Of a stretch of DNA of 64,000 bases, positions 1 to 50,539 are shown piece after piece. The stretch is taken from the IMG/VR virus record IMGVR_UViG_3300021963_000021, positions 248,001 through 312,000 of that record. One strand, written 5' to 3'. The number at the start of each line of letters is the position of its first letter. Positions within the stretch are counted from its first letter, which is position 1. The position numbers were made by a program, and so were the translations under genes. The notes under the pieces were generated by a model, which saw nothing but the letters and a program-made list of their open reading frames with translations, searched no databases and had not been told where the DNA came from.

Positions 1-10
1 TTTAACAGTT

Positions 11-1150
11 TCATGTCTTAAGACCTCTAATCTGATCTATGAAAAATATTTTACTATCTACTCTATTAGGATTCTGTTTTTTGTATTGTTCTATGTATTC
101 GTAGAACAAAGGATTTGCGTCTTTTAATGTTTCTTGCCTCAGAAAATCTAACTTGGTATGTGCGTTTATAAAATGCTCGAAATGATCTTCGGCATCTTGA
201 TCTAAGAAATTTAAAATCTCAGCGTATTCATTGCCGTATGCTTCGACGATGGGTCTGATTATCTTTTTATAATCAGCAGGCAAATGATTGATAGAAAGAT
301 AGTTAGGCCACATCAGCAATCTTCTGGTATGTTTGAATCTAGGAAAATTCGTTTCGGTGAATGTTTTTATAGGTGCTAAAAGATTAACATTATATGCGCT
401 GACTGTGGTATGTAATTGTATTTCAGTTAGCCCAGTTCGTTGATCAAATAGACTGTCAAACACTTTCATGATTTCGCAAGACGACTCAAAATCAGCACCA
501 CTTCTAAAATAATCGTTGATGCCTCCATGACCATCTATACTCAATGTTATCCAAAGGTCTTTGGCTCCCCTAAAAATTTCCATCCATCTCTCTGAAGGGA
601 CCACTGTACAATTCGTGGATATTCCTAGGAAGATATTTTTAAGTTTTCCCTGCTGTAACAAATCATACATGAAGTTTTCGGCTTTTTTGCTTAGGAGAGG
701 TTCTCCTCCTGAAAGATTAATTTCAGCCAGTTCACTGTAATCTAAATTTTCTTGATATGTGCTAGTGACATACTTTGTGTCAATGAAAGTCTCACCGTAG
801 AGTTCTTTTTCATCTTCAAATATTAAATGGCTGTTAGTGCTGACACAGCCTCTACATTTGAGATTACACACATTGTCAAAACTGATGTCTAAAACTTTTA
901 GTTTAGATTTGTAGGTAACACCATATTTTTTAATATAGTCAGTACGTCTAGAATCTTTACCATGCTCTTCGTCATGGTAGCATTGAGCGCAGTTGGGAAC
1001 ACGCTCTCCATTGATCATTGCCTGTTTTACTTTTTCAAAATCTACAATGCCTGTGATTTCGTCGTGTGCCCAATAGCAACAGGGTGCTACTAGATTAGGC
1101 ACTACATTAAGACCGATCCACGGAAATGGACAATATGTATTAGAAGTCAT
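11..1150 (-). CDS. Radical SAM protein with N-terminal twitch-type Cys cluster
   Basis: CxxxCxxC (CNLKCRGC), GGEP motif, N-terminal YCPFPW...CC...CAQC. Confidence 0.9.
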   Translation of the reverse strand: MTSNTYCPFPWIGLNVVPNLVAPCCYWAHDEITGIVDFEKVKQAMINGERVPNCAQCYHDEEHGKDSRRTDYIKKYGVTYKSKLKVLDISFDNVCNLKCRGCVSTNSHLIFEDEKELYGETFIDTKYVTSTYQENLDYSELAEINLSGGEPLLSKKAENFMYDLLQQGKLKNIFLGISTNCTVVPSERWMEIFRGAKDLWITLSIDGHGGINDYFRSGADFESSCEIMKVFDSLFDQRTGLTEIQLHTTVSAYNVNLLAPIKTFTETNFPRFKHTRRLLMWPNYLSINHLPADYKKIIRPIVEAYGNEYAEILNFLDQDAEDHFEHFINAHTKLDFLRQETLKDANPLFYEYIEQYKKQNPNRVDSKIFFIDQIRGLKT

Positions 1151-1965
1151 TAATAACTACCTAAGTTTCCTATGCCGATTTTATTTCTAAAATCGTCTGT
1201 GAATTTACAATCAATCCTTAGACCATATTCTTGCTCTAGGCTGTGTTCCCCGCCATGCCAATCTTGATCATTCCAGAAAGCAGCGTGTGAGTTCACATAG
1301 TGCTTATCTTGTGTGTCTGGATCCCATATATAGAATCCACGTTTTGTACGATATCTAATGTGTATAAATTCGTTGTTATGTGGTGTATAGTAGTCGTTCT
1401 CGAATACACCATTCTTGGCATCTAGATCTCTGTGTTCAAATGCCTTGCCGTTGTGATCGCATAAGAAGAATATCACACGACCTATTCTGTCTATGATATT
1501 CTGCTGCTGTAGATTTTCCACCCAACGTACTACGTTAGGAAAATGTTGGCTTTCTTCGGTCTTTTGGCGTTCGGAATTACGTTCATTCCAATCTCCCTCA
1601 TTCCACAAGAAGTAATATATGTAAGGGTCATTGGCACCTAGTGCTGATTTAAGATATCTAGTAAACAGATTTCTTTGTTTGTAGTCTTTGAAATCTTTAG
1701 GGTATATTTCTTTTCCCTGTACTTTGATAGGATGGTCGTCTGCTAATGCTAGGTATTCTTCATGTGCTTTGTATATTGGTTTCCAGTCCCATTTGTAACT
1801 GCCACGGCTTTGATCAAAGCCCGGCGCCATCCAAGTTCCTTCTTTGGCATAATCTCTAGCCAACGCAAGGCCTTTACATATCTCAGGATGTAAATCTATG
1901 AACCCTTGTATGTCCAAATAAGGGTCTAAATTAATATAAGGGTGTCCACCAATACCGCGAATCAT
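1150..1965 (-). CDS. Putative 2OG-Fe(II)-type oxygenase (Asp/Asn hydroxylase-like)
   Basis: HxD (HRD) and distal WH motif with DSBH-like spacing; lies in an oxygenase-rich cluster. Confidence 0.55.
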   Translation of the reverse strand: MIRGIGGHPYINLDPYLDIQGFIDLHPEICKGLALARDYAKEGTWMAPGFDQSRGSYKWDWKPIYKAHEEYLALADDHPIKVQGKEIYPKDFKDYKQRNLFTRYLKSALGANDPYIYYFLWNEGDWNERNSERQKTEESQHFPNVVRWVENLQQQNIIDRIGRVIFFLCDHNGKAFEHRDLDAKNGVFENDYYTPHNNEFIHIRYRTKRGFYIWDPDTQDKHYVNSHAAFWNDQDWHGGEHSLEQEYGLRIDCKFTDDFRNKIGIGNLGSY

Positions 1966-1991
1966 ACAACTACTTATTCGCTATATACGAT

Positions 1992-2687
1992 ATGAACAAC
2001 GACTTTGAATATTACTATAACAATGTTCCGGGCAAAGGTCTCTGTCGGAATAATCTAATCTATACCAGTTTTATCAACAAAGAAAGAACGGTATTTTGCC
2101 AAAGGTATCACAACGACACTGATTATCATCGTGGACAGAATCAAGTAGTAGATCCATCATTGATGGAAGAAAAATGGTTACGTGAAGTAAACTACATTAC
2201 ACAAATGCGTAACGTTTATCCTGATCTAGTACCAAGAATTTTAAATATAAAACTTCAAGAACGTGAGCTGTATTTTGAAATACAAGGTGTTGATTTTTGG
2301 CAACAGACCTTAGACAACAACTGCTCATACGATGACATACTGCCTGACTGGCGTGAACAGATGCTGGACATATTTAAAGCCCATAAAAGTTTAGGCATTT
2401 ACAAATACAGTTTACATCCTAGCAGCTACTTTATTGTTGACGGACAACTTAAAAGTATTAACTACTTCTTTTGTTATAACAACTTAAGTGCCCCTATAAG
2501 CCTACGTAGTGTAATGAGTCACATCAGCGAAGACCGACAAGCTGACTTGTTTCCTAAAATGGCTGCGATGGGTATCAATGTAGATGCTCCTACACCCCAC
2601 AGTCAAATACAACAGTTGGCATTTGAAAGTTTTAAAACAAACTTCCCCACTGACTTCATGGACGAATGTAAAAAGCTGTATGTATAA
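1992..2687 (+). CDS. Protein kinase-like fold protein (degenerate catalytic motifs)
   Basis: alphaC-like REVNY, LVPRIL, GIYKYSLHPSSYFIVDGQLKSINY; aligns with 13515-14222. Confidence 0.5.
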   Translation: MNNDFEYYYNNVPGKGLCRNNLIYTSFINKERTVFCQRYHNDTDYHRGQNQVVDPSLMEEKWLREVNYITQMRNVYPDLVPRILNIKLQERELYFEIQGVDFWQQTLDNNCSYDDILPDWREQMLDIFKAHKSLGIYKYSLHPSSYFIVDGQLKSINYFFCYNNLSAPISLRSVMSHISEDRQADLFPKMAAMGINVDAPTPHSQIQQLAFESFKTNFPTDFMDECKKLYV

Positions 2688-3234
2688 GATTGTACCTTGG
2701 TCGGAAGATTTAGACTTAACTGAGTTCTATGCGGAAGCAGAAAGCCGTGGCTTTGCTAACAATGCTAGCCAGAAGGTAATGATTGATTGTTTTCGCAACG
2801 AGCCAGAATGGGCAGCATGGATACTATACAAAGACGACAAGGCTGTCGGTAGTGTGGCCGCACATTCATTTAATGTAATGGGAACAAATTGTTATCGTGT
2901 ACTAGCACGTACTTGTACGTTCGGCGAAGCAAGGCAGAATGGCGGACTGATTACGCCTAAGAAGTTAATTGCCGAACATCAGAACTTAACGGATCAGTTC
3001 TTGTTGCCTGTGTGTTTAGGGTGGACTGGAAATAATCGTGTGTTTGCCACCAGCAACGAAAGCCAAGTAGCAAGTCAACGACTTGTACATAGACATTACT
3101 TTCCTACGCTAGAGAAGTTAGGCATTGTAAGTCGTGTAGGTGATATGGTATATCGTAATACTGAACAAACTGTCTGGGAAATACATCCAGACGCTTTCCT
3201 TGAAAACTTAGAACGATATCCTAGATGGATCTAA
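2680..3234 (+). CDS. GNAT-like hypothetical protein
   Basis: Start reassigned to ATG 2680 (overlaps the upstream stop); WILYKDDKAVGSVAAH and YRVLARTC resemble GNAT beta strands. Confidence 0.4.
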   Translation: MYKIVPWSEDLDLTEFYAEAESRGFANNASQKVMIDCFRNEPEWAAWILYKDDKAVGSVAAHSFNVMGTNCYRVLARTCTFGEARQNGGLITPKKLIAEHQNLTDQFLLPVCLGWTGNNRVFATSNESQVASQRLVHRHYFPTLEKLGIVSRVGDMVYRNTEQTVWEIHPDAFLENLERYPRWI

Positions 3235-3795
3235 TCCTGGATTGATTCGTTTTAATTCACGATAGACAAATGGTGTTAACTTCCAAACAAATTCCATCTG
3301 TCTAATATTTGTGTTGTTGATCCAAAAATTTACAGCACCTATTATTTCATCGTATTTGATGGTCCAGTCACTGGTAAATGCTTCCGGATCGTTTTGATTT
3401 ATTTCTGTGCTTTCTATAAAACTAAGATCCAGGTGTAGCACATCTGGTCCATATGGATCTATGCTAATCAAGCGACAGGCTTCTGCTAGTTCTTGTTTAT
3501 CGTGTACATACTGTGTAGGAATAAGATCCGGATAAAATCTACTAACAGATCCCATGACTATGATCCTAGGCACATAGTCTTTGACTGCTAACAATAATTT
3601 TGTCTGCTGCTGGTCTCGGTAAGCATTATTGATAAACAAATCGCAGCCTTTGATTTCTTCTACAACTCGATCAAAGTCTTTGTCTATGTCGTAGCCGTTT
3701 GATCTACTGAGTCCTTTGACTTCTGCTCGCTCGTAGAAAAATTCCCAAAGGGCTTTTCCTATACCGTGAGTGTGACCTGTTATTACGACTTTCAT
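3208..3795 (-). CDS. Short-chain dehydrogenase/reductase-like protein
   Basis: ITGHTHGIGKAL Rossmann motif, FINNA, YxxxK (YVHDK). Confidence 0.8.
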   Translation of the reverse strand: MKVVITGHTHGIGKALWEFFYERAEVKGLSRSNGYDIDKDFDRVVEEIKGCDLFINNAYRDQQQTKLLLAVKDYVPRIIVMGSVSRFYPDLIPTQYVHDKQELAEACRLISIDPYGPDVLHLDLSFIESTEINQNDPEAFTSDWTIKYDEIIGAVNFWINNTNIRQMEFVWKLTPFVYRELKRINPGLDPSRISF

Positions 3796-4280
3796 TTGTA
3801 AGTAACGTTGAATTTAACTGTAATGATGCTGGGATTGTCTAGCCAAAAGTCTACTAGATTGATTACAGATTTTTTGTCTTTGTATGAACTGCTGGTTAGT
3901 TTAATTAACATGAGGTCAGTGTCTACATTCTTTTCTTTGGACAGAGTTTCGCACAAGTCATCTAATTCTTTTTTATGTTGACTGTATTCTGGTCTATCTG
4001 GGTCTGGGTATTCGCTGGCTACGCTGCCGCAGACAACCATGCCCTGTACCTTGCCAAACAATGCTTTAACTAAAGGTATCTGTGCTCCGTTAGCATAGGC
4101 ATTGTTAATGAACAGATCGCAGCCCTTTGCCACTGATGCTATTTTGTCAACATCCTTTTCTATGTCCCAACCGTTGCTGCGAGAAAATCCCTGTACTTCC
4201 CAACCTATATCTACAAAGTAGTCGTAGAGGGCTTTACCTAGCCCGCTAGTATGCCCAGTTATAAAACAAGTCTTATTCAT
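3792..4280 (-). CDS. Short-chain dehydrogenase/reductase-like protein (paralogue of neighbour)
   Basis: ITGHTSGLGKAL, FINNA, YxxxK (YSQHK). Confidence 0.8.
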   Translation of the reverse strand: MNKTCFITGHTSGLGKALYDYFVDIGWEVQGFSRSNGWDIEKDVDKIASVAKGCDLFINNAYANGAQIPLVKALFGKVQGMVVCGSVASEYPDPDRPEYSQHKKELDDLCETLSKEKNVDTDLMLIKLTSSSYKDKKSVINLVDFWLDNPSIITVKFNVTYK

Positions 4281-4941
4281 AATTTACTTTGAACTCCGGC
4301 GTTACAAGTTGTTTAAATTCATCTAACAACTCTCGCTCTAATTTAAATTTTAAACTAAATGTGTTATGGGCAAAGTCTGCTAACTTGTATTTCTGATTGG
4401 CACGATTTAAGAACGGGCTAAAGATTTTATCGAACTTGTATCTAAAGTCGTGTTGTTCATATGCTGGCTCCATACTAATGCTGACTAAGTCTACAGGCTG
4501 ACGACTACGGCGTAGTGGTTCGCGTACTACTAACTGTAGTCGTGAAATTGATCCGTAGTTTGTTGCCGCATGTATGCGACTAGCATCCATATACGCCCAA
4601 CGATTATCTCTCTCACATTTGTACATAACTTCATTGTCTAAATCAATCAAGTATGCTTGCTCACCTGTTAAGTTTAAGTGCCACCGATTGTCTATATCAG
4701 CATGTGCCATATAACTCTCACCAGGTTCCATTTTAATAATACGTGCTTGTCCAATAGTCATTGGCATAGAGTCTAATACTTGTTGCCAAAGTGTATCTTT
4801 GTACAAGTCTTTAATTTGCCAGCTATCGTAAAAGAAATCACCTGTTGGTTCATTAAGAACAACACTGCCCGTAATAGGATGCTCTTTTAGTGCTTGCTCT
4901 ATGAGACCTTCTGGGCAGGTCCATATCTGTTTAGTAATCAT
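4273..4941 (-). CDS. Aspartyl/asparaginyl beta-hydroxylase-like 2OG oxygenase
   Basis: ARIIKMEPGESYMAHADIDNRWHL...IHAATNYG...RLQLV. Confidence 0.75.
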   Translation of the reverse strand: MITKQIWTCPEGLIEQALKEHPITGSVVLNEPTGDFFYDSWQIKDLYKDTLWQQVLDSMPMTIGQARIIKMEPGESYMAHADIDNRWHLNLTGEQAYLIDLDNEVMYKCERDNRWAYMDASRIHAATNYGSISRLQLVVREPLRRSRQPVDLVSISMEPAYEQHDFRYKFDKIFSPFLNRANQKYKLADFAHNTFSLKFKLERELLDEFKQLVTPEFKVNYE

Positions 4942-4970
4942 GAAATATTTATGTGCTACTATAACCCGTG

Positions 4971-4976: not shown

Positions 4977-4980
4977 CTTC

Positions 4981-5742
4981 ATGAATTCATTCACAGTAAA
5001 TGATGTTGAAATACCCTTTGATCACAATTGGTCCAGTGTTGCCATAAGCCTCAGTGGAGGTGCTGACTCTGCGCTATTAGCATACCTTTTATGCGATCAT
5101 GTTCGACAGAATCACATAGAACCATTTACCGTACACATCATAAGTCATACACGTATGTGGAAAACCAAACCATGGCAAGAGCATGACAGTTTGGCTGTGT
5201 TTAGGTGGCTGTTAAACAAATTTACACATATCACATTTCATAGGCATACTAACTTCATAGCACCTGAATTAGAATGGGGAGACAAAGGCCCGACTATAGT
5301 AGACGAATATGGTAAACTAGTCAGCGGCGACAATGTTGAACTCAGAGCATTTGGAGAATACGTCTGCCATCATAACAAGGTAAATGCCTATTATAACGCA
5401 GTCACTAGAAATCCAAAAAATGTCAGCTTCAAGGGCATGCCAACTAGAGATATAGATCCAACCGATGATAATCAACATCTTAGGATAATGGAACACATGG
5501 GTGTGATGGCCTGTCATCCATTTAGATTTGTTGATAAAAGTTGGGTGGTTAAGACTTACAATAAATTAAACCTACAAGATCTATTCTACATGACTCGTAG
5601 TTGTGAAGGTGACAACTCAACTAGACCGGAAGTATTTTTAGATTTAGATTACAAAACATACAAGCCAGGGCAACCAGTACCAATTTGCGGTCGTTGTTTT
5701 TGGTGTAAAGAAAGGGCATGGGCAATTGAACAGTCAAAGTAA
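4981..5742 (+). CDS. QueC-like PP-loop ATPase (7-cyano-7-deazaguanine synthase-like)
   Basis: SLSGGADS PP-loop and C-terminal C...CGRCFWC Zn motif; start reassigned to ATG 4981. Confidence 0.7.
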   Translation: MNSFTVNDVEIPFDHNWSSVAISLSGGADSALLAYLLCDHVRQNHIEPFTVHIISHTRMWKTKPWQEHDSLAVFRWLLNKFTHITFHRHTNFIAPELEWGDKGPTIVDEYGKLVSGDNVELRAFGEYVCHHNKVNAYYNAVTRNPKNVSFKGMPTRDIDPTDDNQHLRIMEHMGVMACHPFRFVDKSWVVKTYNKLNLQDLFYMTRSCEGDNSTRPEVFLDLDYKTYKPGQPVPICGRCFWCKERAWAIEQSK

Positions 5743-8985: not shown

Positions 8986-10336
8986 ATTTAAAATCTGTTC
9001 CCCTTAGAGTTTCCATACGTTCTATGTATTCACGGAACGCAGGCAATAAATGAGTATGATCCTCGCTGTCCATAAATTTTAACACAGCTTGCCAACGCTG
9101 CCAACCGTAGGGATTTTCTTTCCAGAAATCCTCATCCTGTCTATAATTTATATACAGCCAGTTTGCCAACATAGCAAAGTTTTCTCTAACCTCAGCTTTG
9201 TCCTCGTCGGGTAACGCCTTGATGCTTAAGAATGTAGGTATGTATAATAAGTGCATATTAAACAATCCACCGCCTGCTTGTATGCCTCCAGTGACATTTT
9301 CAAAATTAATTTTTTTGAAACCTTCACGCACTTTCCATTTGGCAAGATCGGGTAAGTGTTTAATATTCAATATCTGTATAGCTGTGGCAATACTAGCCTG
9401 TATGTTGGCCGGAGCCTTGTCGAGCTTGTGTAGATTTTTTACCACAGTGTCCCAATCAGTAGGAAACCGTATATAACGATTTTTCTCTCCTACTGCGTCG
9501 ATGCTTACACCGACCTTAACTAATCTAAACTTAGACCAAAGATCGATTATCTCGTCATCTATGAGTAGACCGTTAGTATTGTATCTAACTAATATTTTAT
9601 CAGCATATCCTTGACGTATGATTTCTTCTAAGAACAGTTTATGTTCTTTAATCATCAAGGGTTCGCCACCTGCGAAGTATACCTGTTTTAGATTAGGAAT
9701 CTGCGCATACATTTCTTTCCAGAAGTCTGGATTCTCGTGCCAAAAATTATTGAAGTCTCCACGACCCCAGGCCATTTGTTCTTTTAACTCTTTGGCTTGG
9801 AATAACGGATAGACTTTCTTGTGATCCGCTACCCACTGACTGCTGTCGTGTGGACTACACATAATACATTTTAAATTACAGGTATGCCCTAGTCTAAGAT
9901 CTAGGTAAATTAACTGTTCTGGTACTGTGCCATCTTCTTCAGTTTGTTTAACTAGTTCTTCTAGGTCTATACCTTCCTCAACCCATGTACCTGTTTCCCA
10001 AATGCGCTTGCTGGCTACACCGCGACTTTCTTCTTTATAACACTTGGCACAACTGGCTGGAATGTTGCCGTCTAGCATGGTTAGGCGCACATCCTTCATA
10101 TAGTCGTTGTTCCAAGCACTCATAGGAGTTTCCCGACCAAAGTTAGCAGGTTTGCCTGTTTCGTTTTTTACTAGCCCTATCTCATGATCTGTGCCTGCGC
10201 CGCTGCTGTTAGAATTACAGCACAACCTCATATCACCGTTTGGTCTTGTGGCAAAGTGTATCCATGGTAATACACAGAAAGTTTTACTGCCAGTCAACTG
10301 CTCAATCTTGTCTTGCCAATGTTTGATTTTATCCAT
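8936..10336 (-). CDS. Twitch-domain radical SAM protein
   Basis: FCVLPW...LCC...CAKC; CNLKCIMC; FAGGEP. Confidence 0.92.
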   Translation of the reverse strand: MDKIKHWQDKIEQLTGSKTFCVLPWIHFATRPNGDMRLCCNSNSSGAGTDHEIGLVKNETGKPANFGRETPMSAWNNDYMKDVRLTMLDGNIPASCAKCYKEESRGVASKRIWETGTWVEEGIDLEELVKQTEEDGTVPEQLIYLDLRLGHTCNLKCIMCSPHDSSQWVADHKKVYPLFQAKELKEQMAWGRGDFNNFWHENPDFWKEMYAQIPNLKQVYFAGGEPLMIKEHKLFLEEIIRQGYADKILVRYNTNGLLIDDEIIDLWSKFRLVKVGVSIDAVGEKNRYIRFPTDWDTVVKNLHKLDKAPANIQASIATAIQILNIKHLPDLAKWKVREGFKKINFENVTGGIQAGGGLFNMHLLYIPTFLSIKALPDEDKAEVRENFAMLANWLYINYRQDEDFWKENPYGWQRWQAVLKFMDSEDHTHLLPAFREYIERMETLRGTDFKSTFPELEHLLNYSKAP

Positions 10337-11324
10337 TACAGTTCTTTGCGCATACCCACGGCTTGTCTTGGCTAGCCCATAGGTCTGACAAATTTCTCCA
10401 CTCGATGTCTTTTATGTTAGTATTCTCTAAATTAGCGATGCCCACGTCTTTGAATTTTTCTTTGGTATCGCTGACCAATGTGTTTCTCAATTTACGCAGT
10501 TCTGTATTTTCTTCGATAGACTCTTCGATCCAATCACTGCCCACCCAACAGCAAGGAAATACATTGCCACGGGCGTCTACGTAAACCTCATTGCTTTGTT
10601 TACACTTAGGGACTATGTTTACGTTTTTTGTCCATTGCTCAGGACTCCTAATTATTTCATCGATGTTAACTTTTGATACTGTTTTAATAGAACTAGGTTC
10701 AAGTCTATATTCTATATTTCCGTCTGTGTTCTGTACAGGAAAACTTTCCATGTTATAGAAACGACCTGTGTATTTAAAATTAATTTTACTAACGCCAAGT
10801 TTTTTTAAAAATATTTCTAGAGCTTCTACTTGATGTTCGTTGTGCTTGAACACTAGACAGTCAACAACAGCAACACCGCCAGTATGAATAAAGTCTACCA
10901 TGTTATCTATGATCCTAGACCAATTGGTATTTCTTCGATACAGCTTGTGTGTATCTTCAAACCCATCTATACCAAATGACACTTCTACTTTTAACCTTGC
11001 TAGAGACTGCCACCAGTCTGCCGTCCTAGCACTGCCATTAGTGTGTATAGATAGTCGTGCTGTGGGATTTACTTCTCGTACATATTCAAATATTTCTAAA
11101 CAGTCTCTGGCTATTATAGGATCACCGTAATTGCCACAGGCATAGAAGTTTTTTAAATCCCTAAGAAACGACGGCCCGAACCATTTTTTAAATTTGTCTA
11201 GAGTAATTTCATGCTGACCTACAAAGGCACGTTCAGCGCCGCCGTTGTAATTTCTAGCACACATAGGGCAGCTGGCCTGACACTGGTCTGTGAGTTCTAT
11301 ATGTAGGTCTGTGATTTTATACAT
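10329..11324 (-). CDS. Radical SAM/SPASM protein
   Basis: CQASCPMC; CGNYGDP; C-terminal C...PCCW...CAKNC; ATG 11324 overlaps the upstream TAA. Confidence 0.9.
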   Translation of the reverse strand: MYKITDLHIELTDQCQASCPMCARNYNGGAERAFVGQHEITLDKFKKWFGPSFLRDLKNFYACGNYGDPIIARDCLEIFEYVREVNPTARLSIHTNGSARTADWWQSLARLKVEVSFGIDGFEDTHKLYRRNTNWSRIIDNMVDFIHTGGVAVVDCLVFKHNEHQVEALEIFLKKLGVSKINFKYTGRFYNMESFPVQNTDGNIEYRLEPSSIKTVSKVNIDEIIRSPEQWTKNVNIVPKCKQSNEVYVDARGNVFPCCWVGSDWIEESIEENTELRKLRNTLVSDTKEKFKDVGIANLENTNIKDIEWRNLSDLWASQDKPWVCAKNCNG

Positions 11325-11860
11325 TACCAAAAATTCAAAATGTACTTGGGTGTTAGGCCGCAGTTAGTTCCAGCATGCCACAGCTTTCTGCTAGACCATT
11401 CATAGGTAGCACCTTGCGGCTGATTATATAAACATTGATGCCCGACTATAAACACATGACCAAATGCTGGCTGACCTATATGACAATGATATCTTTTAAC
11501 ATCAGGCATTTTAGATTCATCGTCCATGACATCCCAATGCTGTGGAGCAAAGTATCCTGGCCATATCCTGCTGATCCATGCTGTGGTATATTTTTCTACT
11601 CTAACAAACTCAGCGAATCTATCGGCGATCTTAGGATCAAAGTTGTCTCCGGGAAAGAACATGTCCCATGATACTGTTCCGCCATCCTGTTTGGTTTTGT
11701 ACCCTGCTTGTTGCCATAGGTCTGTGACTTCTTTTAATTCAGGAATAGGATCGCCGGCTTTATGCTTGGGTCCTATGTAAGCAGGCTTTTGAGATTCGAG
11801 ATCTTTTACAACGAGATCCCAATTTATCAACGGAGCACAGTTACCAATGTAGTTAATCAT
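11324..11860 (-). CDS. 2OG-Fe(II)-type oxygenase-like protein
   Basis: HWD...WHAGTNCG; paralogue of 12950-13534. Confidence 0.65.
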   Translation of the reverse strand: MINYIGNCAPLINWDLVVKDLESQKPAYIGPKHKAGDPIPELKEVTDLWQQAGYKTKQDGGTVSWDMFFPGDNFDPKIADRFAEFVRVEKYTTAWISRIWPGYFAPQHWDVMDDESKMPDVKRYHCHIGQPAFGHVFIVGHQCLYNQPQGATYEWSSRKLWHAGTNCGLTPKYILNFW

Positions 11861-12774
11861 TTTATGATACTTTCCCACACGTCAATGGTCCTGTCTAGCC
11901 CTTCGTCTAAACTTACCTTAGGTGCCCACCCAGTGACTTTGGTTATTAGATTGTGATTGCTGTTTAACCAATATATTTCGCCGGGTCTAAATAATTTAGT
12001 ACCCCATTTTATTTCGCCATTCCAGTTTAGCTTTTTAGCTATCTTTAATGCGTAGTCTCTGATCTTGATAGGATCGTCTGGACCTATAGTAAAGATATAT
12101 CCATCATTAACTAACTCGGGATTGTTAATCACAGTCATCCAAGCATCTAATAAATCATCAATGTAGATAAAATTACGATACGGCTCTGCGTATCCAAACC
12201 CTACTTGGTTAGGATTCTCTAACATTTGACTTATGATCTGTTCTGTAACAAAAAACTTGTTGTCTTTGCGACCGTAGCTGTTAGTCTGTCTAATAGCAGT
12301 GAACGGTAGATTCAAACAACGGTGTGCGTATTCTAGATACTTCTCACAGCCATACTTGGCCACAGCATACGGTGCGTTGGGATTAGGCTGTGTGTTTTCG
12401 TCAAACGCTACAAACTCTTTAGGAATGATGTTGTTCTTGACTTCATCACTGATTGGTTGCCATCCATAGACTTCCATGGTGCTAGCAAACACAAAGTTTT
12501 TTAAATTCTTTACTCGAGCAGCACCTTCTATTAGATTGACTGTGCCTACATAATTAATTTCACTGAAGGTCAGCTGTTCATAGAAACTCTGTTCTACTTC
12601 AGTTCTAGCGGCCAAGTGAACAATGATATCCGGGGATACCGCTACTACTTCTAACTGTACTGCTTTGTGATCTCTTAGATCGCTTTTTAAATGATATACT
12701 TCATGATCCTGTTCTAACAGTGGAGTTAGATGCGATCCTATGAATCCCGAAGAGCCTGTCATTAAAATTTTCAT
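11857..12774 (-). CDS. NAD-dependent NDP-sugar epimerase/dehydratase
   Basis: GSSGFIG, HLAA, YxxxK (YAVAK), RNFIYIDD. Confidence 0.93.
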   Translation of the reverse strand: MKILMTGSSGFIGSHLTPLLEQDHEVYHLKSDLRDHKAVQLEVVAVSPDIIVHLAARTEVEQSFYEQLTFSEINYVGTVNLIEGAARVKNLKNFVFASTMEVYGWQPISDEVKNNIIPKEFVAFDENTQPNPNAPYAVAKYGCEKYLEYAHRCLNLPFTAIRQTNSYGRKDNKFFVTEQIISQMLENPNQVGFGYAEPYRNFIYIDDLLDAWMTVINNPELVNDGYIFTIGPDDPIKIRDYALKIAKKLNWNGEIKWGTKLFRPGEIYWLNSNHNLITKVTGWAPKVSLDEGLDRTIDVWESIIK

Positions 12775-12953
12775 CGAGGCGCCCTTTCAAGCTCATCAAA
12801 AAAATCTATGCCAAACTCTTTTTCTACTTGTTCTTTTAATTGAGGGTTCTGTTGTATGTTATAGAGTTTACGCCATAGCACAATATTTTGCTGCTGTATC
12901 TCCATAAATTTTTTTACATAAAACGGTTCTGTTAAAACTGGTTCTTCAGTCAT
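12771..12953 (-). CDS. Hypothetical protein
   Basis: 60-aa ORF with ATGA-type overlaps on both sides. Confidence 0.6.
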   Translation of the reverse strand: MTEEPVLTEPFYVKKFMEIQQQNIVLWRKLYNIQQNPQLKEQVEKEFGIDFFDELERAPR

Positions 12954-13534
12954 CTAGGTCTTCCTAAAAAATGAAATAGATAATATGGCTCACTGCCACA
13001 ATTGGTTCCTGCGTGGTGTGACCTATAGGAATCCCAAACATATAACTCGTTTTGAGGCACGTTATAAAAACACTGTTCTTCTAATATCAAGACATGACCA
13101 AACTTTGGCTTGTCTATAAAACAAACATATCTGACCAAGGGTCCTTGTGCCAGCCATTCTTTTTCTTTGTCTTCGACGTCCCAGTGATAGGGCACACAAG
13201 CACCCGGCATTACTTCGCTGACAAATACACGTAGGGGATCTGCGTTAACTAGATTAGCAAACTTGGTCTGTATGTCTATGGGGAAATGCTCTCCGGGGTA
13301 ATAGTCCCACCATTCAATTTTAGTAAGGTCGTAACCAGCCTTTTCCCAAGTACTGATAATTCCTCTATAGGAATTTAAAAGTTCCTGATCGCCTACGGCT
13401 TCTGCTTCGGATCTATCGACTACAGATGTAACAGTATTGTGATCACCTGTTCTAGGAGTGATGGCACCTAGGACTGTGTCCCAATCTATTACTCCTTTAG
13501 TTGTTCCAATATGCTTAGGCATCTTCAGTTCCAA
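12950..13534 (-). CDS. 2OG-Fe(II)-type oxygenase-like protein
   Basis: HWD...HHAGTNCG; paralogue of 11324-11860. Confidence 0.65.
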   Translation of the reverse strand: MELKMPKHIGTTKGVIDWDTVLGAITPRTGDHNTVTSVVDRSEAEAVGDQELLNSYRGIISTWEKAGYDLTKIEWWDYYPGEHFPIDIQTKFANLVNADPLRVFVSEVMPGACVPYHWDVEDKEKEWLAQGPLVRYVCFIDKPKFGHVLILEEQCFYNVPQNELYVWDSYRSHHAGTNCGSEPYYLFHFLGRPR

Positions 13535-14222
13535 ACATTTTAACGTATAACCAATTAAGATTTTCTTCGCCCCATTGAACGTGTGTGCTCATAGAACGTT
13601 TGAACATCTTTTCTAGATTATAATATGTATCATTGCTGTCAGTTTCGTCTAGTCTAAATCTAGCAGTTTCGTGTACGATCCCGTCCATGGCATATTTAGG
13701 AATCCACGGACTATCTGTATCTACGCAGCCATACATATCGAAGGTCTTGAGTTGCCCATCGTAGATATAATGACAATGCGGATACATTGTTAGTTTATAT
13801 GAACCTAGATTATAACAGTCAGTCATAATACATTGTAACTGATTTTTCCATTCTGGGCAATAGTCTTGTAAAGATTTGCCGCTGTAGATAATTTCGTTAC
13901 AGGTATCTCCCTGCCATTTGAAAAATATATGTAGGTGCGTTGTATCAATGTCAACGATTTCTGGACACCACGGCTGGTTTTGAAATTTTAGAAAATGCTT
14001 GATTTCATTGTCAAAGAACCAATCTACGACTTCTTTGGTGTATCCTTCGCGAGCTTGATACTTGTTGTTATAGTCGTAGTTGGCACAGAACAATTTCTTA
14101 TCTTGACTGATAAGAGGTTCGTAGGTCTGTTGTGCCATAGCACGTTGACCTAATTCGTTTAGTTTATAATAGGGAGTCCACTTAGAAGTTTCTAGGATCA
14201 TACCCCACCCTCGGTCTATCAC
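13515..14222 (-). CDS. Protein kinase-like fold protein (degenerate)
   Basis: NEIKHF, WCPEIVDI, GSYKLTMYPHCHYIYDGQLKTFDMYG; start may be 14201. Confidence 0.5.
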   Translation of the reverse strand: MIDRGWGMILETSKWTPYYKLNELGQRAMAQQTYEPLISQDKKLFCANYDYNNKYQAREGYTKEVVDWFFDNEIKHFLKFQNQPWCPEIVDIDTTHLHIFFKWQGDTCNEIIYSGKSLQDYCPEWKNQLQCIMTDCYNLGSYKLTMYPHCHYIYDGQLKTFDMYGCVDTDSPWIPKYAMDGIVHETARFRLDETDSNDTYYNLEKMFKRSMSTHVQWGEENLNWLYVKMFGTEDA

Positions 14223-14997
14223 TAAAGAAGCAACTGGCTATCCATTTAGTACCTTTGGTAATAAGTTTGCTTTCGTGGATAGTACTCCAATTAGTTTCTT
14301 CGTCATAGCCCTGTTCGAAATACAGCAAGGAACCAGTTTTAGGTTTTATCTCAACTCCTAGTTTAGGAAACAGAGTTTCTCCGCCCTCAAAGTCGTCATT
14401 GAAATAAAATATACCTGTACCTACTCTATCACCGCCATACTTGTAATAATGTATCTGTTTTGGATCGTAGGGATAGTCGTGGTGTAGATCTAAAAACTGT
14501 CCTGTTTCGTAATTATAGACATCAATGGCTTCTATGTGACTATAAGGTACACGAGCATATGTTGTTATAGCAGTGGCCAGGACATCATAGTCGTAGGGGT
14601 CGACTCCGAGACTGATTCCTCTATTCTCTACTAGTTCTGTTACCTGAGCATACGACTCTGTTCGAGACTGACCGCCTGAATTAGGATTCATGCCCGCAGA
14701 TGAATGTTTGGCAATTATGCTGGCACAATACTCAGGAGTTAAAACATTTTCAAAAACAGAAATACGTGGTCGAGCAAAATGCTTTACTTCCTGTACTGTA
14801 GATCTTACTTTGCTAGCCCTTACAGGTATGCCGGGAGAAAATACTCTAAAGAATTCTATTGGCTGTAATTCAAACACAACCTTAGGGTCATCTAAAATAT
14901 CTTCTTTGGTTATCAGCAGGTCAGCCTGATCTAAGTCTGCGGTTATGAATCCGTAGCCTTTAGCATCATTGTACCATTTTACTTTTCCTGTTTCCAT
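14182..14997 (-). CDS. Cold-shock domain / prolyl-4-hydroxylase-type 2OG-Fe(II) oxygenase fusion
   Basis: N-terminal GKVKWYNDAKGYGFI (RNP-1); C-terminal HHD...YFNDDFEGGETLF...IH...KGTKWI. Confidence 0.85.
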   Translation of the reverse strand: METGKVKWYNDAKGYGFITADLDQADLLITKEDILDDPKVVFELQPIEFFRVFSPGIPVRASKVRSTVQEVKHFARPRISVFENVLTPEYCASIIAKHSSAGMNPNSGGQSRTESYAQVTELVENRGISLGVDPYDYDVLATAITTYARVPYSHIEAIDVYNYETGQFLDLHHDYPYDPKQIHYYKYGGDRVGTGIFYFNDDFEGGETLFPKLGVEIKPKTGSLLYFEQGYDEETNWSTIHESKLITKGTKWIASCFFSDRPRVGYDPRNF

Positions 14998-15959
14998 TAT
15001 CTACTCTTTGGTATCTTGCTGTCTGCTGAACTAACACAACTAGGAGTCGCACATTTTTTAGATTCTTTAAACAACTCAAATCCATCAGTTAGTGTGCCTA
15101 GCGGCTCGTCGTGACAACTATACCCTCTTTTAACTTCATTGCTTCTAATGATTAAACTTTGATAACCAGCATTACAATTCCATCCTTGGAATTTATTAAA
15201 TTCAAAAGCATTAAATCTCTCTGCTTGATCAATGTAGTAATCTTTAACACCATCGGACAATCTTATCTGATATACATCTTGATCTTGTGATTTCTGTGGA
15301 AACCCTTGTCGCATGATATCTATCATTTCTTGTGTGTAACCACTGACTATCTGACTAGCAGTTTCGTTGCTCTGTGGTTTAAGTGTTACGTTGATACCAC
15401 GTTTGTGAAATCGTTCCATGCGTTCATACAGTTCATAAAACTTTTCTGGCACCATTACTTGATTGATTGTAACATGTACCAGTTCATATTGTAACTGTAG
15501 ACACTTGTCTCCAAACTCTTGCTCTTTGGCAAACTCATCGTGATAACTGGCTGTGATACTACGGCGTTGTAACAGGCTAGTATTGTTACACCATGTGTTC
15601 CACCACTTGCTGCCGGGCGACAGGTTAGTAGTCATGTGTACGCTTTGATAGCTGCTTTCTGTTTCGTCTAGATGTTTGATTAGATCTAACAGATGTTTGT
15701 AGGCTGTTGGTTCTCCGCCACTGAAACTCCAATGGAAAGCATTGAACCCATTTAGTCTAGCCTGTCTTTTTATTTCATCAACTGTTTTGATATAGACATC
15801 TAAGTCTTGATAGTCGAGTTGATCGCTTCTGGCATATGGCCAGCAGTAAGAGCACTTGTAGTTACAGAACCTGCCTAGTATCCAACTTACGTTAAACAAC
15901 TGCTGGTCTAACATAGTCTGCTGCCCAAAGGATTTTATTTCATCAAATGGTACTTTCAT
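14997..15959 (-). CDS. Radical SAM protein
   Basis: CNYKCSYC; SGGEP; C-terminal C...C...CATPSC. Confidence 0.92.
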   Translation of the reverse strand: MKVPFDEIKSFGQQTMLDQQLFNVSWILGRFCNYKCSYCWPYARSDQLDYQDLDVYIKTVDEIKRQARLNGFNAFHWSFSGGEPTAYKHLLDLIKHLDETESSYQSVHMTTNLSPGSKWWNTWCNNTSLLQRRSITASYHDEFAKEQEFGDKCLQLQYELVHVTINQVMVPEKFYELYERMERFHKRGINVTLKPQSNETASQIVSGYTQEMIDIMRQGFPQKSQDQDVYQIRLSDGVKDYYIDQAERFNAFEFNKFQGWNCNAGYQSLIIRSNEVKRGYSCHDEPLGTLTDGFELFKESKKCATPSCVSSADSKIPKSR

Positions 15960-50537: not shown

Positions 50538-50539
50538 TG

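What the first reader, a model, noticed from the sequence alone, without database searches (positions are those of the whole stretch)
11..15959. Radical SAM / 2OG-oxygenase tailoring mega-cluster in a phage
Seen in ~16 kb: 7 radical SAM genes with intact CxxxCxxC motifs (three in an overlapping run on the plus strand converging on two on the minus strand), most with extra twitch/SPASM Cys clusters. Also 5 HxD...H oxygenases, 2 SDRs, a QueC-like PP-loop protein, a GNAT-like protein, 2 kinase-like proteins and an NDP-sugar epimerase, with UDP-glucose dehydrogenase just downstream. Start/stop overlaps suggest translational coupling. Established: these families carry out base hypermodification, RiPP maturation and sugar tailoring. 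Inference: a multi-step pathway acting on phage DNA, virion proteins/glycans or the host surface. No precursor peptide or DNA-modifying transferase is evident here, so the product is unknown.
Basis: partly seen in the sequence, partly recalled or inferred. Interest (0 to 1): 0.72.

Follow-up and report, generated by a model that had tools for sequence, protein, structure and literature searches.

The report
Radical-SAM sugar-tailoring island in jumbo phage
A giant freshwater phage carries a conserved block of about 30 genes packed with radical-SAM enzymes, oxygenases and a streptomycin-type amidinotransferase; it most likely builds or decorates an unusual amino sugar or glycan, and related blocks occur in a few cultured phages and, greatly expanded, in predatory Bdellovibrio-like bacteria.

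Summary
All seven radical SAM (rSAM) genes are confirmed, each with CxxxCxxC plus four further conserved Cys. The five HxD...H proteins, the NDP-sugar epimerase/dehydratase, the PP-loop protein and the kinase-like pair are supported. The "GNAT" is not, and the UDP-glucose dehydrogenase is truncated.

The island runs off the window start. It spans about 25.5 kb and about 30 genes (genome 238.5-264.0 kb), with nine rSAMs from three families. Upstream lie a PLP aminotransferase, a possible glycosyltransferase and a close homologue of StrB1, the streptomycin inosamine-phosphate amidinotransferase (E 9e-92).

The genome is a complete 364-kb jumbo myovirus with a T4-type capsid, from an uncultured freshwater/brackish clade. 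Relatives keep the rSAM core (12-16 rSAMs per record) and shuffle the accessory genes.

The same families form islands in Bdellovibrionota chromosomes (10-20 N-terminal-twitch rSAM paralogues per genome). Smaller homologous modules, interleaved with glycosyltransferases, occur in Campylobacter phage CP220 and Synechococcus phage S-SCSM2R.

Best reading, at about 0.5: a multi-step pathway tailoring an amino sugar, aminocyclitol or glycan. Peptide and nucleic-acid targets are less likely but not excluded. This is an expanded variant of a known, uncharacterised kind of phage module.

The parts
1..14 (-). First codons of a third cupA/cupB-type 2OG-oxygenase paralogue. The gene spans genome 247520-248014 and runs off the window start.
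   Evidence: Family HMM, 114 bits. PF05118 match on the upstream part. 4-nt overlap with the next gene.
11..1150 (-). Radical SAM, N-terminal-twitch family (NF033640), here called RS3nt.
   Evidence: PF04055 33 bits. NF033640 205.8 bits against a cut-off of 170. CNLKCRGC motif. 39% identical to the upstream paralogue.
1150..1965 (-). Putative 2OG/Fe(II) oxygenase (cup271).
   Evidence: H178, D180 and H237 are invariant in 16 homologues. Weak HMM link to the AspH-like family. No Pfam or PDB match.
1992..2687 (+). Protein-kinase-like fold protein (kinA), a paralogue of kinB.
   Evidence: BLASTP to kinB, E 4.6e-12. The Atlas result for kinB applies by paralogy.
2680..3234 (+). Conserved protein of unknown fold. 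The listed ORF starts at 2584; the conserved start is M33.
   Evidence: Alignment of 12 homologues. No hit in Pfam, NCBIfam, PHROGs or the PDB.
3208..3795 (-). Short SDR-like protein (sdrA, 195 aa).
   Evidence: TGxxxGxG and YxxxK motifs. 39% identical to sdrB. Only sub-threshold SDR hits.
3792..4280 (-). Short SDR-like protein (sdrB, 162 aa).
   Evidence: adh_short 19.3 bits, below the cut-off of 26.6. Motifs visible.
4273..4941 (-). AspH/LpxO-type 2OG oxygenase (AAH3).
   Evidence: PF05118 22.7 bits against a cut-off of 22.6. HMM links to the AAH1 and cupAB families.
4981..5742 (+). PP-loop ATP pyrophosphatase, QueC-like. The listed ORF starts at 4894; the conserved start is M30.
   Evidence: Invariant SGGxDS and a C-terminal C..CxxCxxC motif. 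PF01171 19.2 bits. phrog_1550 'QueC-like' 29.5 bits. PDB profile search gave only weak PP-loop hits.
5726..6994 (+). Radical SAM, N-terminal-twitch family (RS4nt).
   Evidence: NF033640 316.4 bits. N-terminal SPASM-type match at residues 9-69.
6978..7886 (+). Radical SAM with a C-terminal four-Cys domain (RS5).
   Evidence: PF04055 43.4 bits. C240, C260, C283 and C288 conserved at 92%.
7879..8985 (+). Radical SAM with a C-terminal four-Cys domain (RS6).
   Evidence: PF04055 50.6 bits. Paralogue of RS5 and RS9. Conserved Cys.
8936..10336 (-). Radical SAM, N-terminal-twitch family (RS7nt), the best-conserved core gene.
   Evidence: NF033640 408.5 bits. 61-96% identical in 42 phage loci. 45-49% identical in Bdellovibrionota. 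AF2 model with pLDDT 92 has only generic rSAM structural neighbours.
10329..11330 (-). Radical SAM, third family (RS8).
   Evidence: PF04055 40.2 bits. C260/261, C327 and C331 conserved. 32% identical to upstream uRS1. Family also present in CP220.
11324..11878 (-). Small AspH-like 2OG oxygenase (cupA).
   Evidence: Invariant H-x-D...H. Paralogue of cupB.
11857..12774 (-). NAD-dependent NDP-sugar epimerase/4,6-dehydratase. Accessory: seen in 7 related loci.
   Evidence: PF01370 1.2e-36 and PF16363 7e-36. Nearest NCBIfam models are LegB and dTDP-glucose 4,6-dehydratase, both far below cut-off.
12771..12953 (-). 60-aa ORF that exactly fills the gap, with 4-nt overlaps at both ends.
   Evidence: ORF list. 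Not Cys-rich. Conservation not tested.
12950..13534 (-). Small AspH-like 2OG oxygenase (cupB).
   Evidence: AF2 pLDDT 94. Foldseek top hits are AspH, proline hydroxylases, P4H and Cpz10. H117, D119 and H174 invariant. Family also sits beside the amidinotransferase in S-SCSM2R.
13515..14222 (-). Protein-kinase-like fold protein (kinB).
   Evidence: ESM Atlas neighbours are RIO1, WaaY, Kdo-kinase and APH clusters, with structural TM 0.62-0.67 to kinases.
14182..14997 (-). Prolyl-4-hydroxylase-type 2OG oxygenase with an N-terminal cold-shock-domain fragment.
   Evidence: PF13640 41.5 bits and CSD 27.9 bits over residues 3-29. PDB: B. anthracis P4H at E 5e-23, also Chlamydomonas and PBCV-1 P4H.
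14997..15959 (-). Radical SAM with a C-terminal four-Cys domain (RS9).
   Evidence: PF04055 48.6 bits. About 50% identical to Bdellovibrionota orthologues. Tight shared clade in the tree.
15956..16627 (-). Unknown 223-aa protein at the downstream edge. Overlaps RS9 by 4 nt.
   Evidence: No Pfam or NCBIfam hit. Found in 9 related loci.
17760..18509 (-). Truncated UDP-glucose/GDP-mannose dehydrogenase-like protein (249 aa), downstream of ClpP.
   Evidence: PF00984 58.8 bits and a partial PF03721 34.3 bits. No C-terminal domain.

Best explanation
The finding is the larger part of a conserved island of about 25.5 kb and about 30 genes (genome 238.5-264.0 kb). I propose that it works as a multi-step pathway on a carbohydrate-type scaffold: an NDP-sugar, amino sugar or aminocyclitol, either free or already part of a glycan.

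Shown: the enzyme families present, their conservation as a block, and their recurrence next to glycosyltransferases elsewhere.

Inferred: the chemistry and its order.
1. A hydroxyl group is oxidised by a short SDR or by a twitch-type radical SAM dehydrogenase. Alternatively an NDP-hexose is 4,6-dehydrated.
2. The keto group is transaminated by the PLP enzyme.
3. The intermediate is phosphorylated by the kinase-fold proteins.
4. The amine is converted to a guanidine by the StrB1-like amidinotransferase.
5. Further C-H positions are hydroxylated by the seven or eight AspH/P4H-type 2OG oxygenases. The nine auxiliary-cluster radical SAM enzymes remodel other positions by epimerisation, deoxygenation or C-C bond formation.
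6. A QueC-like PP-loop enzyme amidates a carboxylate.

The product is then either attached by GT-A-type transferases to a surface or virion glycoconjugate, or released as a small molecule. The tandem paralogues suggest that the lineage diversifies this product.
For: Conservation as a block.
- The RS7nt, RS4nt, RS5/6/9 and RS8 families are present in 39-44 of 44 related phage loci. Accessory families are present in 15-36.
- Whole relatives carry 12-16 rSAMs, mostly clustered; in the complete relative (G001) all 13 lie within about 22 kb.

Carbohydrate-type families in the island.
- NDP-sugar epimerase/dehydratase.
- StrB1 inosamine-phosphate amidinotransferase homologue: full length, E 9e-92, GGFHCTTLD motif. 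It is 63-64% conserved beside the rSAM island in 4 of 5 relatives.
- PLP aminotransferase fold.
- Fusion of two 'sporadic carbohydrate cluster' families, both below cut-off.
- Possible GT-A domain in u403.
- Kinase fold nearest WaaY, Kdo-kinase and APH clusters.
- Several SGNH/GDSL families in relatives and in phage RsoM2USA.

Homologous modules interleaved with glycosyltransferases in three independent settings.
- S-SCSM2R: 2OG oxygenase, three GTs, aminotransferase, rSAM, GT, a cupAB-family oxygenase, amidinotransferase, GT2.
- CP220: RS8-family x3, RS5/6/9-family, amidinotransferase, two nucleotide-diphospho-sugar transferases, PAP2 phosphatase.
- Halobacteriovoraceae: six or seven rSAMs, four GT2s, a QueC-like protein and an AspH-like protein.

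From established knowledge, not tested here: the characterised single-auxiliary-cluster (twitch) rSAMs BtrN and HygY act on aminocyclitols or sugars. BtrN pairs with an aminotransferase, as in the minimal cellular operon of rSAMs plus a PLP-type gene (281 aa; its family assigned by my clustering and one member's fold, no Pfam hit on record).
Against: - No enzyme here has been assayed, and none of the three rSAM families has a characterised member.
- Structural neighbours of RS7nt are generic (TM 0.3-0.36) and include peptide-modifying enzymes.
- The phage island has no unambiguous glycosyltransferase. The u403 GT-A signal is weak (pTM 0.50). The only Pfam GT2 hit in the genome is weak and 220 kb away.
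- I identified no nucleotidyltransferase or sugar-phosphate cyclase to make the scaffold.
- The P4H and AspH families are best known as protein hydroxylases.
- The epimerase, amidinotransferase and several other sugar-type genes are accessory, not core.
- The kinase-fold proteins lack an obvious catalytic HxD motif on inspection.
Confidence: 0.5

Rival explanations
1. Protein or peptide modification. The hydroxylases and rSAMs modify a ribosomal peptide or a phage or host protein, for example by Pro/Asp hydroxylation followed by glycosylation, or by radical cross-links as in RiPPs.
For: - The P4H is a clear homologue of peptidyl-prolyl hydroxylases.
- AspH is the top structural match of cupB.
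- The nearest solved rSAM structures include CteB, SkfB, anSME and SuiB.
- Some island proteins in Bdellovibrionota and related phage loci fuse an AspH-like domain to the u403-type domain, recalling the collagen hydroxylase-glycosyltransferase PLOD.
- In S-SCSM2R an amidinotransferase and a prolyl dihydroxylase were detected in the virion proteome (PMC12801897).
- A tenth rSAM lies just downstream of a tail-fibre-like gene.
Against: - No precursor-like gene: the island is tightly packed, and its only small ORF (60 aa) is not Cys-rich.
- No RRE/PqqD domain and no C-terminal seven-Cys SPASM domain.
- No collagen-like G-x-y repeats in any predicted protein.
- An amidinotransferase, aminotransferase, NDP-sugar dehydratase and SDRs are not expected in a peptide pathway.
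Confidence: 0.2
2. Nucleic-acid hypermodification. The enzymes modify phage DNA bases or the phage's own tRNAs.
For: - The PP-loop protein is QueC- or TilS-like.
- The island borders a 28-tRNA array, and tRNA arrays lie near the island in some relatives.
- From my own knowledge, not tested here: Campylobacter Firehammervirus phages, which carry homologous rSAM modules, are reported to have non-canonical guanine replacements.
- rSAMs take part in known thymidine and 7-deazaguanine pathways.
Against: - No TGT/DpdA transglycosylase and no ThyA-type hydroxymethylase in the complete genome, while ThyX is present.
- QueE models score 24-36 bits against cut-offs of 206-260.
- Of the 80 loci drawn from prokaryotic genome assemblies, only L050, probably a misbinned phage contig, has a tRNA array; 11 others have one or two tRNAs.
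- No match to known tRNA-modifying rSAM families.
Confidence: 0.12
3. No joint pathway. The region is a hyperplastic dump of independently acquired auxiliary genes, each acting alone on host metabolites.
For: Accessory gene content varies strongly between relatives. Timms et al. (PMC2853527) called the CP220 and CPt10 modules interchangeable and probably non-essential.
Against: - The same three rSAM families stay adjacent in phages and in Bdellovibrionota, with the RS8-type, RS7nt and RS9-type genes in conserved order.
- Start/stop overlaps run through the whole block.
- Each paralogue has its own orthologous clade across phages and cells.
- The cupAB-amidinotransferase-rSAM sub-module recurs in a distant cyanophage.
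Confidence: 0.1

Closest known systems
Central radical-SAM module of Campylobacter phages CP220 and CPt10 (Firehammervirus; Timms et al. 2010, PMC2853527)
   Same: A T4-type myovirus with 11-12 rSAM genes in the genome. Its module of five rSAMs plus an amidinotransferase belongs to the same RS8, RS5/6/9 and amidinotransferase families by my family HMMs (96-107, 79 and 219 bits). The function is unknown. The authors likewise concluded it was acquired en masse.
   Different: CP220 has no N-terminal-twitch rSAMs, and my family HMMs found no AspH/P4H oxygenases, PP-loop, kinase-fold or SDR genes in the stretch scanned (L135). It has two GT-A transferases and a PAP2 phosphatase that the present island lacks. 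Identity is low: 22-29% for the amidinotransferase and 22% for RS9 against a CP21 rSAM.
Synechococcus phage S-SCSM2R, ORF301-310 ('antibiotic synthesis genes', PMC12801897)
   Same: It has the same amidinotransferase family (34% identity, 260 bits), a cupAB-family 2OG oxygenase directly upstream, an RS5/6/9-family rSAM and a PLP aminotransferase, all in a T4-type phage.
   Different: It has only one rSAM and five glycosyltransferases in the operon. Its aminotransferase is of the AHBA_syn/DegT type rather than the class I/II-like form seen here.
Aminocyclitol steps of aminoglycoside biosynthesis (streptidine: StrI, StsC, kinase, StrB1; 2-deoxystreptamine: BtrS, BtrN)
   Same: The same set of reaction types is encoded: an alcohol dehydrogenase (SDR or twitch rSAM), a PLP aminotransferase, a kinase-fold protein, a StrB1-type amidinotransferase (E 9e-92) and an NDP-hexose 4,6-dehydratase.
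   Different: I found no inositol-phosphate or deoxy-inosose synthase. The rSAMs are not BtrN relatives (TM about 0.3). The aminotransferase is not of the StsC/BtrS family. No product is known. This is a resemblance in enzyme set, not membership.
NCBIfam NF033640, twitch domain-containing radical SAM protein (N_Twi_rSAM)
   Same: Five proteins of this genome score 204-409 bits against a cut-off of 170.
   Different: The family is only a sequence model and has no characterised member. I found no paper on it.
Radical SAM/SPASM RiPP maturases (sactisynthases, anSME and others)
   Same: They share the rSAM core plus an auxiliary Fe-S Cys cluster. They are the top, though weak, structural neighbours.
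   Different: Here the auxiliary Cys motif is N-terminal, or is a four-Cys C-terminal motif. There is no RRE and no precursor gene.

Membership tests
Radical SAM superfamily (PF04055) | HMM score above the gathering cut-off, plus a CxxxCxxC motif. | tested here: met
   Seven window genes score 33-54 bits against a cut-off of 29.5. Two upstream genes score 53.6 and 36.8 bits. The motif is visible in all window translations and is 99-100% conserved in the RS5/6/9 and RS8 families and invariant in 60 N-terminal-twitch sequences.
NF033640 N_Twi_rSAM | Whole-protein score of at least 170 bits. | tested here: met
   Scores are 205.8, 316.4 and 408.5 bits for the three window genes, 209 bits for the upstream gene and 346 bits for the gene at 151.7 kb. 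The other rSAMs score 28-50 bits and are not members.
NF033640 N_Twi_rSAM | N-terminal Cys motif able to hold an auxiliary Fe-S cluster, placed before the rSAM core. | tested here: met
   C21, C39/40, C96 and C99 are invariant or at least 90% conserved in 60 diverse members. There is a SPASM-type Pfam match at residues 9-69. Cluster binding itself cannot be tested with these tools.
RiPP biosynthetic cluster with an rSAM/SPASM maturase | An adjacent precursor peptide gene. | tested here: not met
   The genes overlap throughout. The only small ORF is 60 aa at 12771-12953 and is not Cys-rich. ORFs under 60 aa were checked only in window 12700-13000 and those under 70 aa were not called in related loci.
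RiPP biosynthetic cluster with an rSAM/SPASM maturase | An RRE (PqqD-like) domain or a C-terminal seven-Cys SPASM domain. | tested here: not met
   No PqqD/RRE hit. The auxiliary motifs are four Cys, either N-terminal or C-terminal.
7-deazaguanine DNA modification (FolE, QueD, QueE, QueC, DpdA) | A DpdA/TGT-family transglycosylase. | tested here: not met
   PF01702 has no match in the complete genome but matches all 14 control genomes.
7-deazaguanine DNA modification (FolE, QueD, QueE, QueC, DpdA) | QueE and QueC at equivalog level. | tested here: not met
   QueE models score 24-36 bits against cut-offs of 206-260. The PP-loop protein has only sub-threshold PP-loop and QueC-like hits.
Thymidine or cytosine hypermodification through 5-hydroxymethyl pyrimidines | A ThyA-family dNMP hydroxymethylase. 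| tested here: not met
   PF00303 has no match in the genome. ThyX is present.
Amidinotransferase (StrB1 / AGAT type, pentein fold) | Full-length homology and the catalytic GGxHC(x)T Cys motif. | tested here: met
   The match to 1BWD has E 9e-92 over residues 3-350 against 4-346, with GGFHCTTLD aligned to GGFHCATLD. H227, D229, H335 and C336 are invariant in the family. The substrate was not tested.
Prolyl 4-hydroxylase (2OG-FeII_Oxy_3) | HMM score above cut-off, and the HxD...H triad. | tested here: met
   PF13640 scores 41.5 bits against a cut-off of 27. PDB P4H matches at E 5e-23. An HHD motif is present.
NDP-sugar epimerase/dehydratase (extended SDR) | Epimerase/GDP_Man_Dehyd HMMs above cut-off. 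| tested here: met
   E 1.2e-36 and 7e-36. No equivalog-level assignment is possible: LegB scores 120 bits against a cut-off of 475.
GNAT acetyltransferase | Any GNAT-family sequence or profile match. | tested here: not met
   No hit in Pfam, NCBIfam, PHROGs or a PDB profile search. The fold was not modelled.
CP220/CPt10-type phage rSAM + amidinotransferase module | Several rSAM genes of the RS8 and RS5/6/9 families next to a pentein-fold amidinotransferase in a T4-type phage. | tested here: met
   My family HMMs hit CP220 gp080-087. The present island contains the same three families.

The most novel reading that the evidence does not exclude
The island makes a free, guanidinylated amino sugar or aminocyclitol metabolite, in effect an aminoglycoside-like compound made during infection. 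The tandemly expanded homologous islands of predatory Bdellovibrionota (10-20 N-terminal-twitch rSAMs per genome) make a diversified family of such compounds. On this reading, phages and bacterial predators would share a radical-SAM-based chemical toolkit used against the cell they consume or against competitors.
Probability: 0.12. Interest if true: 0.9.

Novelty: new variant of a known kind. Interest (0 to 1): 0.68.

Why it matters
Most phage genomes carry few or no radical SAM genes. This clade carries 10-16 per genome in one block.

Modules of this kind have been noted in Campylobacter phages since 2010 and in a cyanophage in 2025, but no function has been assigned. The present analysis adds three things:
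- It ties these scattered observations into one family-level picture: three rSAM families, small AspH-like oxygenases and a StrB1-type amidinotransferase.
- It shows their repeated association with glycosyltransferases.
- It links them to a large, apparently unreported expansion in Bdellovibrionota. 79 of 301 sampled genomes have the N-terminal-twitch family, against 0 of 14 model organisms.

This turns an open question into a testable one, because cultured systems exist: CP220/CPt10 on Campylobacter, S-SCSM2R on Synechococcus and RsoM2USA on Ralstonia.

If the product is a new glycan decoration or a phage-made metabolite, it would define new radical SAM chemistry on carbohydrates and a new class of phage auxiliary metabolism in abundant freshwater phages.

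Tried and rejected
- Close DNA relatives among 50,697 deposited phage records: none. Protein searches there found only distant hits.
- PHROGs: eight of ten island proteins have no family.
- Literature on N-terminal-twitch rSAMs or on Bdellovibrio rSAM islands: nothing found. The 'moraphage' paper describes a different lineage.
- Structure search of RS7nt against the PDB: only generic rSAM folds, with no informative nearest neighbour.
- PDB profile searches for cup271, the 'GNAT' protein and fam14: nothing. The PP-loop family gave only weak PP-loop hits.
- Collagen-like substrate for the P4H: no G-x-y repeats in any predicted protein.
- Riboswitches in the phage island or six cellular islands: none at Rfam gathering thresholds.
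- Bdellovibrionota as host: rejected as unlikely. The phage DnaK is 54-62% identical to theirs, against 65-70% to the best DnaK matches in the phage collection, which lie in records named for Pseudomonas, Acinetobacter, Salmonella and E. coli. The tmRNA fits the betaproteobacterial model.
- tRNA modification as the target, suggested by the adjacent tRNA array: apart from L050, probably a misbinned phage contig, the loci from prokaryotic genome assemblies have no such arrays.
- Promoter and terminator scans: not informative.
- One context look-up failed because the start codon did not match a recorded gene.
- Complex prediction and the representative-library search were not used.

Full report
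WHAT THE SEQUENCE IS

The window is bases 248,001-312,000 of a single-contig virus record of 363,943 bp that CheckV rates as complete.

- It encodes a T4-type Gp23 major capsid protein (E 9.5e-82).
- That capsid is 69-73% identical to those of jumbo myoviruses: Vibrio phage 2.275.O, Sinorhizobium phage Phosso, Pseudomonas PA5oct, Serratia BF and Yersinia fHe-Yen9-04.
- No deposited phage record is close at the DNA level.
- The phage belongs to a large uncultured clade. One rSAM gene alone has more than 3,800 metagenomic homologues (the 120 listed are 79-95% identical). There are 44 related IMG/VR loci.
- Near-identical sequence occurs in runs labelled marine (possibly the source sample), freshwater, riverine and estuarine.
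- Its tmRNA fits the betaproteobacterial Rfam model. Its DnaK is closest to DnaK sequences in phage-collection records named for Pseudomonas, Acinetobacter, Salmonella and E. coli. The host is therefore probably a freshwater proteobacterium.

CHECKING THE OBSERVATION

Radical SAM genes. All seven pass the Pfam gathering threshold and show CxxxCxxC. They fall into three paralogous families.
- N-terminal-twitch family (NCBIfam NF033640, 204-409 bits against a cut-off of 170): 11-1150, 5726-6994 and 8936-10336. Four N-terminal Cys are invariant or nearly so in 60 diverse members.
- C-terminal four-Cys family: 6978-7886, 7879-8985 and 14997-15959.
- A third family: 10329-11330. Both of these last two families carry four conserved extra Cys.
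So every rSAM here probably holds one auxiliary cluster.

HxD...H proteins. All five are supported, to different degrees.
- 14182-14997 is a clear prolyl-4-hydroxylase homologue.
- 4273-4941 is AspH/LpxO-like, at the cut-off.
- 11324-11878 and 12950-13534 have an invariant triad and a confident double-stranded beta-helix model whose top structural matches are AspH, proline hydroxylases and Cpz10.
- 1150-1965 has an invariant triad only.

Other genes.
- The NDP-sugar epimerase/dehydratase is solid.
- The two SDRs are short and sub-threshold but keep their motifs.
- The PP-loop protein keeps SGGxDS and a QueC-like Cys tail.
- The kinase-like pair has a protein-kinase-like fold according to the ESM Atlas.
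- The 'GNAT' found no support anywhere.
- The downstream UDP-glucose dehydrogenase is a 249-aa truncated form.

THE ISLAND IS LARGER THAN THE FINDING

A genome-wide rSAM search showed two more rSAMs just upstream of the window. The upstream 9.5 kb (locus L045) contains, in genome order:
- an unannotated 190-aa ORF;
- a fusion of two 'sporadic carbohydrate cluster' families, a 2OG oxygenase plus an LIC12192-type domain, both below cut-off;
- an RS8-type rSAM;
- a StrB1-type amidinotransferase;
- an unknown 383-aa protein;
- a PLP aminotransferase-fold protein (Atlas score 0.99, TM 0.72-0.91);
- an AspH-like oxygenase;
- a 403-aa protein with a weak GT-A signal;
- a fourth N-terminal-twitch rSAM;
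- a third cupA/cupB paralogue that straddles the window edge.

The island thus spans about 238.5-264.0 kb. It holds about 30 genes: nine rSAMs and seven or eight 2OG oxygenases. A 28-tRNA array lies immediately upstream.

A tenth rSAM, also N-terminal-twitch, lies at 151.7 kb. It sits behind two genes with a D-x-D motif and a tail-fibre-like gene.

CONSERVATION

Across the 44 related loci, families are present as follows:
- N-terminal-twitch, RS5/6/9, RS8 and RS4nt-type rSAMs: 39-44 loci;
- cupA/cupB, AAH3, kinase-like and PP-loop: 29-31 loci;
- P4H, SDR, cup271 and the unknown 'GNAT' protein: 15-18 loci;
- the epimerase: 7 loci.
Many loci are truncated, so these counts are minima.

Five whole relatives have 12-16 PF04055 matches each. 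In the complete 357.6-kb relative, 13 lie within 22 kb. The amidinotransferase is present, 63-64% identical and next to the rSAMs, in four of these five.

So the core is stable and the periphery is shuffled.

Contigs from two freshwater metatranscriptomes cover much of 5726-11330 at 97-99% identity. DNA carry-over cannot be excluded.

RELATIVES OUTSIDE THE CLADE

Bdellovibrionota. Scanning one genome per prokaryotic species with the N-terminal-twitch alignment returned loci that come overwhelmingly from Bdellovibrionota, including chromosomes of 1.9-3.0 Mb.
- The family sits in rSAM-dense islands, with up to about 13 rSAMs in 21 kb.
- These islands also hold RS8-type and RS9-type rSAMs (about 50% identical to the phage proteins), the aminotransferase, AspH-like, amidinotransferase and u403 families, and often GT2 glycosyltransferases and a QueC-like gene.
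- Five such genomes have 10-20 paralogues each, some in runs of seven.
- 79 of 301 sampled Bdellovibrionota genomes have the family, against none of 14 model organisms.
- In a tree of the RS5/6/9 family, RS6 and RS9 each form a phage clade whose nearest rows are from Bdellovibrionota and other MAG contigs, so the gene set as a whole is shared. RS5 forms a phage-only clade.
- A few 'cellular' hits on short MAG contigs are probably misbinned phage.

Cultured phages. Homologous modules exist in three.
- CP220/CPt10 (and the Firehammervirus CP21) have RS8-family and RS5/6/9-family rSAMs plus the amidinotransferase, followed by two GT-A transferases and a PAP2 phosphatase. Timms et al. described this in 2010 as an unusual, interchangeable five-rSAM module (PMC2853527).
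- S-SCSM2R has an operon of a 2OG oxygenase, three GTs, an aminotransferase, an rSAM, a GT, a cupA/cupB-family oxygenase, the amidinotransferase and a GT2. Its authors called three of these 'antibiotic synthesis genes' (PMC12801897).
- RsoM2USA has an N-terminal-twitch rSAM flanked by three SGNH-like genes.

HOW IT MOST LIKELY WORKS

Shown: the families, their linkage, and their recurrent embedding among glycosyltransferases in three independent settings.

Inferred: a carbohydrate-type scaffold is processed in steps.
1. Oxidation, by an SDR or a twitch rSAM, or 4,6-dehydration of an NDP-hexose.
2. PLP-dependent transamination.
3. Phosphorylation.
4. Amidination by the StrB1-like enzyme.
5. Hydroxylation by the 2OG oxygenases and radical remodelling by the rSAMs.
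6. Carboxylate amidation by the PP-loop enzyme.
The product is then transferred to a glycoconjugate or released.

This order follows textbook streptidine and 2-deoxystreptamine logic. That logic is my knowledge, not a test.

I put about 0.5 on a carbohydrate-type substrate. Within that, I cannot say whether the product ends up on the host surface, on the virion or as a free metabolite.

Weaknesses:
- no unambiguous GT in the phage island;
- no scaffold-forming enzyme found;
- no characterised member of any of the three rSAM families;
- P4H and AspH are classically protein hydroxylases.

RIVALS

- Protein or peptide modification (0.2). Favoured by P4H and AspH homology and by the rSAM structural neighbours. 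Disfavoured by the lack of a precursor gene, an RRE, a SPASM domain or collagen repeats, and by the sugar-type enzymes.
- Nucleic-acid modification (0.12). Favoured by the QueC/TilS-like enzyme and the tRNA neighbourhood. Disfavoured by the absence of DpdA/TGT and ThyA-type enzymes and by sub-threshold QueE scores.
- An unconnected set of auxiliary genes (0.1). Disfavoured by conserved adjacency, gene overlaps and per-paralogue orthology across phages and cells.

NOVELTY

This kind of locus, a multi-rSAM plus amidinotransferase module in T4-type phages, is on record but uncharacterised.

What is new here:
- the scale: nine rSAMs in the island and ten in the genome;
- the N-terminal-twitch family and the AspH-like expansion;
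- the family-level link between the Campylobacter-phage, cyanophage and jumbo-phage modules;
- the large expansion of the same families in Bdellovibrionota.

I rate it a new variant of a known kind, with interest 0.68.

Noticed in passing
L045 6282-6746 (-), genome 234282-234746, upstream of the window: A GOLLD RNA (Rfam RF02032, 211.6 bits against a gathering score of 150) sits inside the 28-tRNA array (L045 4111-9855). It overlaps the odd ARAGORN call 'tRNA-Asn(att)' at 6610-6681.
   Followed up: partly
window 50488-50888 (-): Phage-encoded tmRNA with tag peptide ANDNVYALAA. Among standard tmRNA models it fits the betaproteobacterial one (RF01850, 120.5 bits; a shorter stretch also matches the permuted-tmRNA model RF04321 at 137.2 bits). 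This hints at a betaproteobacterial host.
   Followed up: partly
window 41389-43263 (-): Full-length DnaK homologue. It is 65-70% identical to its best DnaK matches in the phage collection (records named for Pseudomonas, Acinetobacter, Salmonella, E. coli) and 54-62% identical to Bdellovibrionota DnaK.
   Followed up: partly
window 16799-17371 (-) and 17389-17757 (-): ClpP protease (PF00574, 6.8e-30) and a DUF3307 protein lie between the island and the truncated UDP-glucose dehydrogenase.
   Followed up: no
window 14182-14270 (-), N-terminus of the P4H gene: The first 30 or so residues are a cold-shock-domain fragment with a KGYGFI motif, fused to the prolyl hydroxylase. Homologues in relatives are mostly about 242 aa long. 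This may be a recombination scar or a mis-called start.
   Followed up: no
L131 7140-10085 (+), genome 150140-153085: A second small locus holds two paralogous genes with an invariant D-x-D ('VDGDN') motif, possibly GT-A transferases, followed by a fifth N-terminal-twitch rSAM. It lies downstream of a tail-fibre-like gene with a Peptidase_G2/intramolecular-chaperone domain and next to ThyX.
   Followed up: partly
window 29558-31609 (-) and 32435-34486 (-): Two ORFs of exactly 683 aa lie close together. The first matches phrog_35576 (unknown function) at E 5.8e-186. The second has no PHROG match.
   Followed up: no
window 53375-54475 (-) and 55898-58234 (-): Class Ia ribonucleotide reductase small and large subunits. 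A tail-spike-like protein lies at 58684-60276.
   Followed up: no
genome 16798-20016 and 44084-44977 (outside the window): A further weak GT2 match and two more epimerase/dehydratase-family genes, one in a 528-aa ORF. These suggest a second sugar-nucleotide locus in the phage.
   Followed up: no
L133 7976-12011 (Ralstonia phage RsoM2USA gp200-203): In this cultured jumbo phage an N-terminal-twitch rSAM (235 bits to my family HMM) is flanked by three SGNH/GDSL-like genes. All are annotated as hypothetical.
   Followed up: partly
L050 (MAG contig labelled Neisseriaceae), also L047/L051 (Crocinitomicaceae), L052/L114 (Rickettsiales) and L119 (Betaproteobacteria TMED41): L047 is a short contig (4.9 kb) and the others are mid-size (13-47 kb). 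They carry the rSAM island families, and L050 also carries 12 tRNAs. They look like phage contigs binned into bacterial genomes, so their taxonomic labels should not be read as cellular occurrences.
   Followed up: partly
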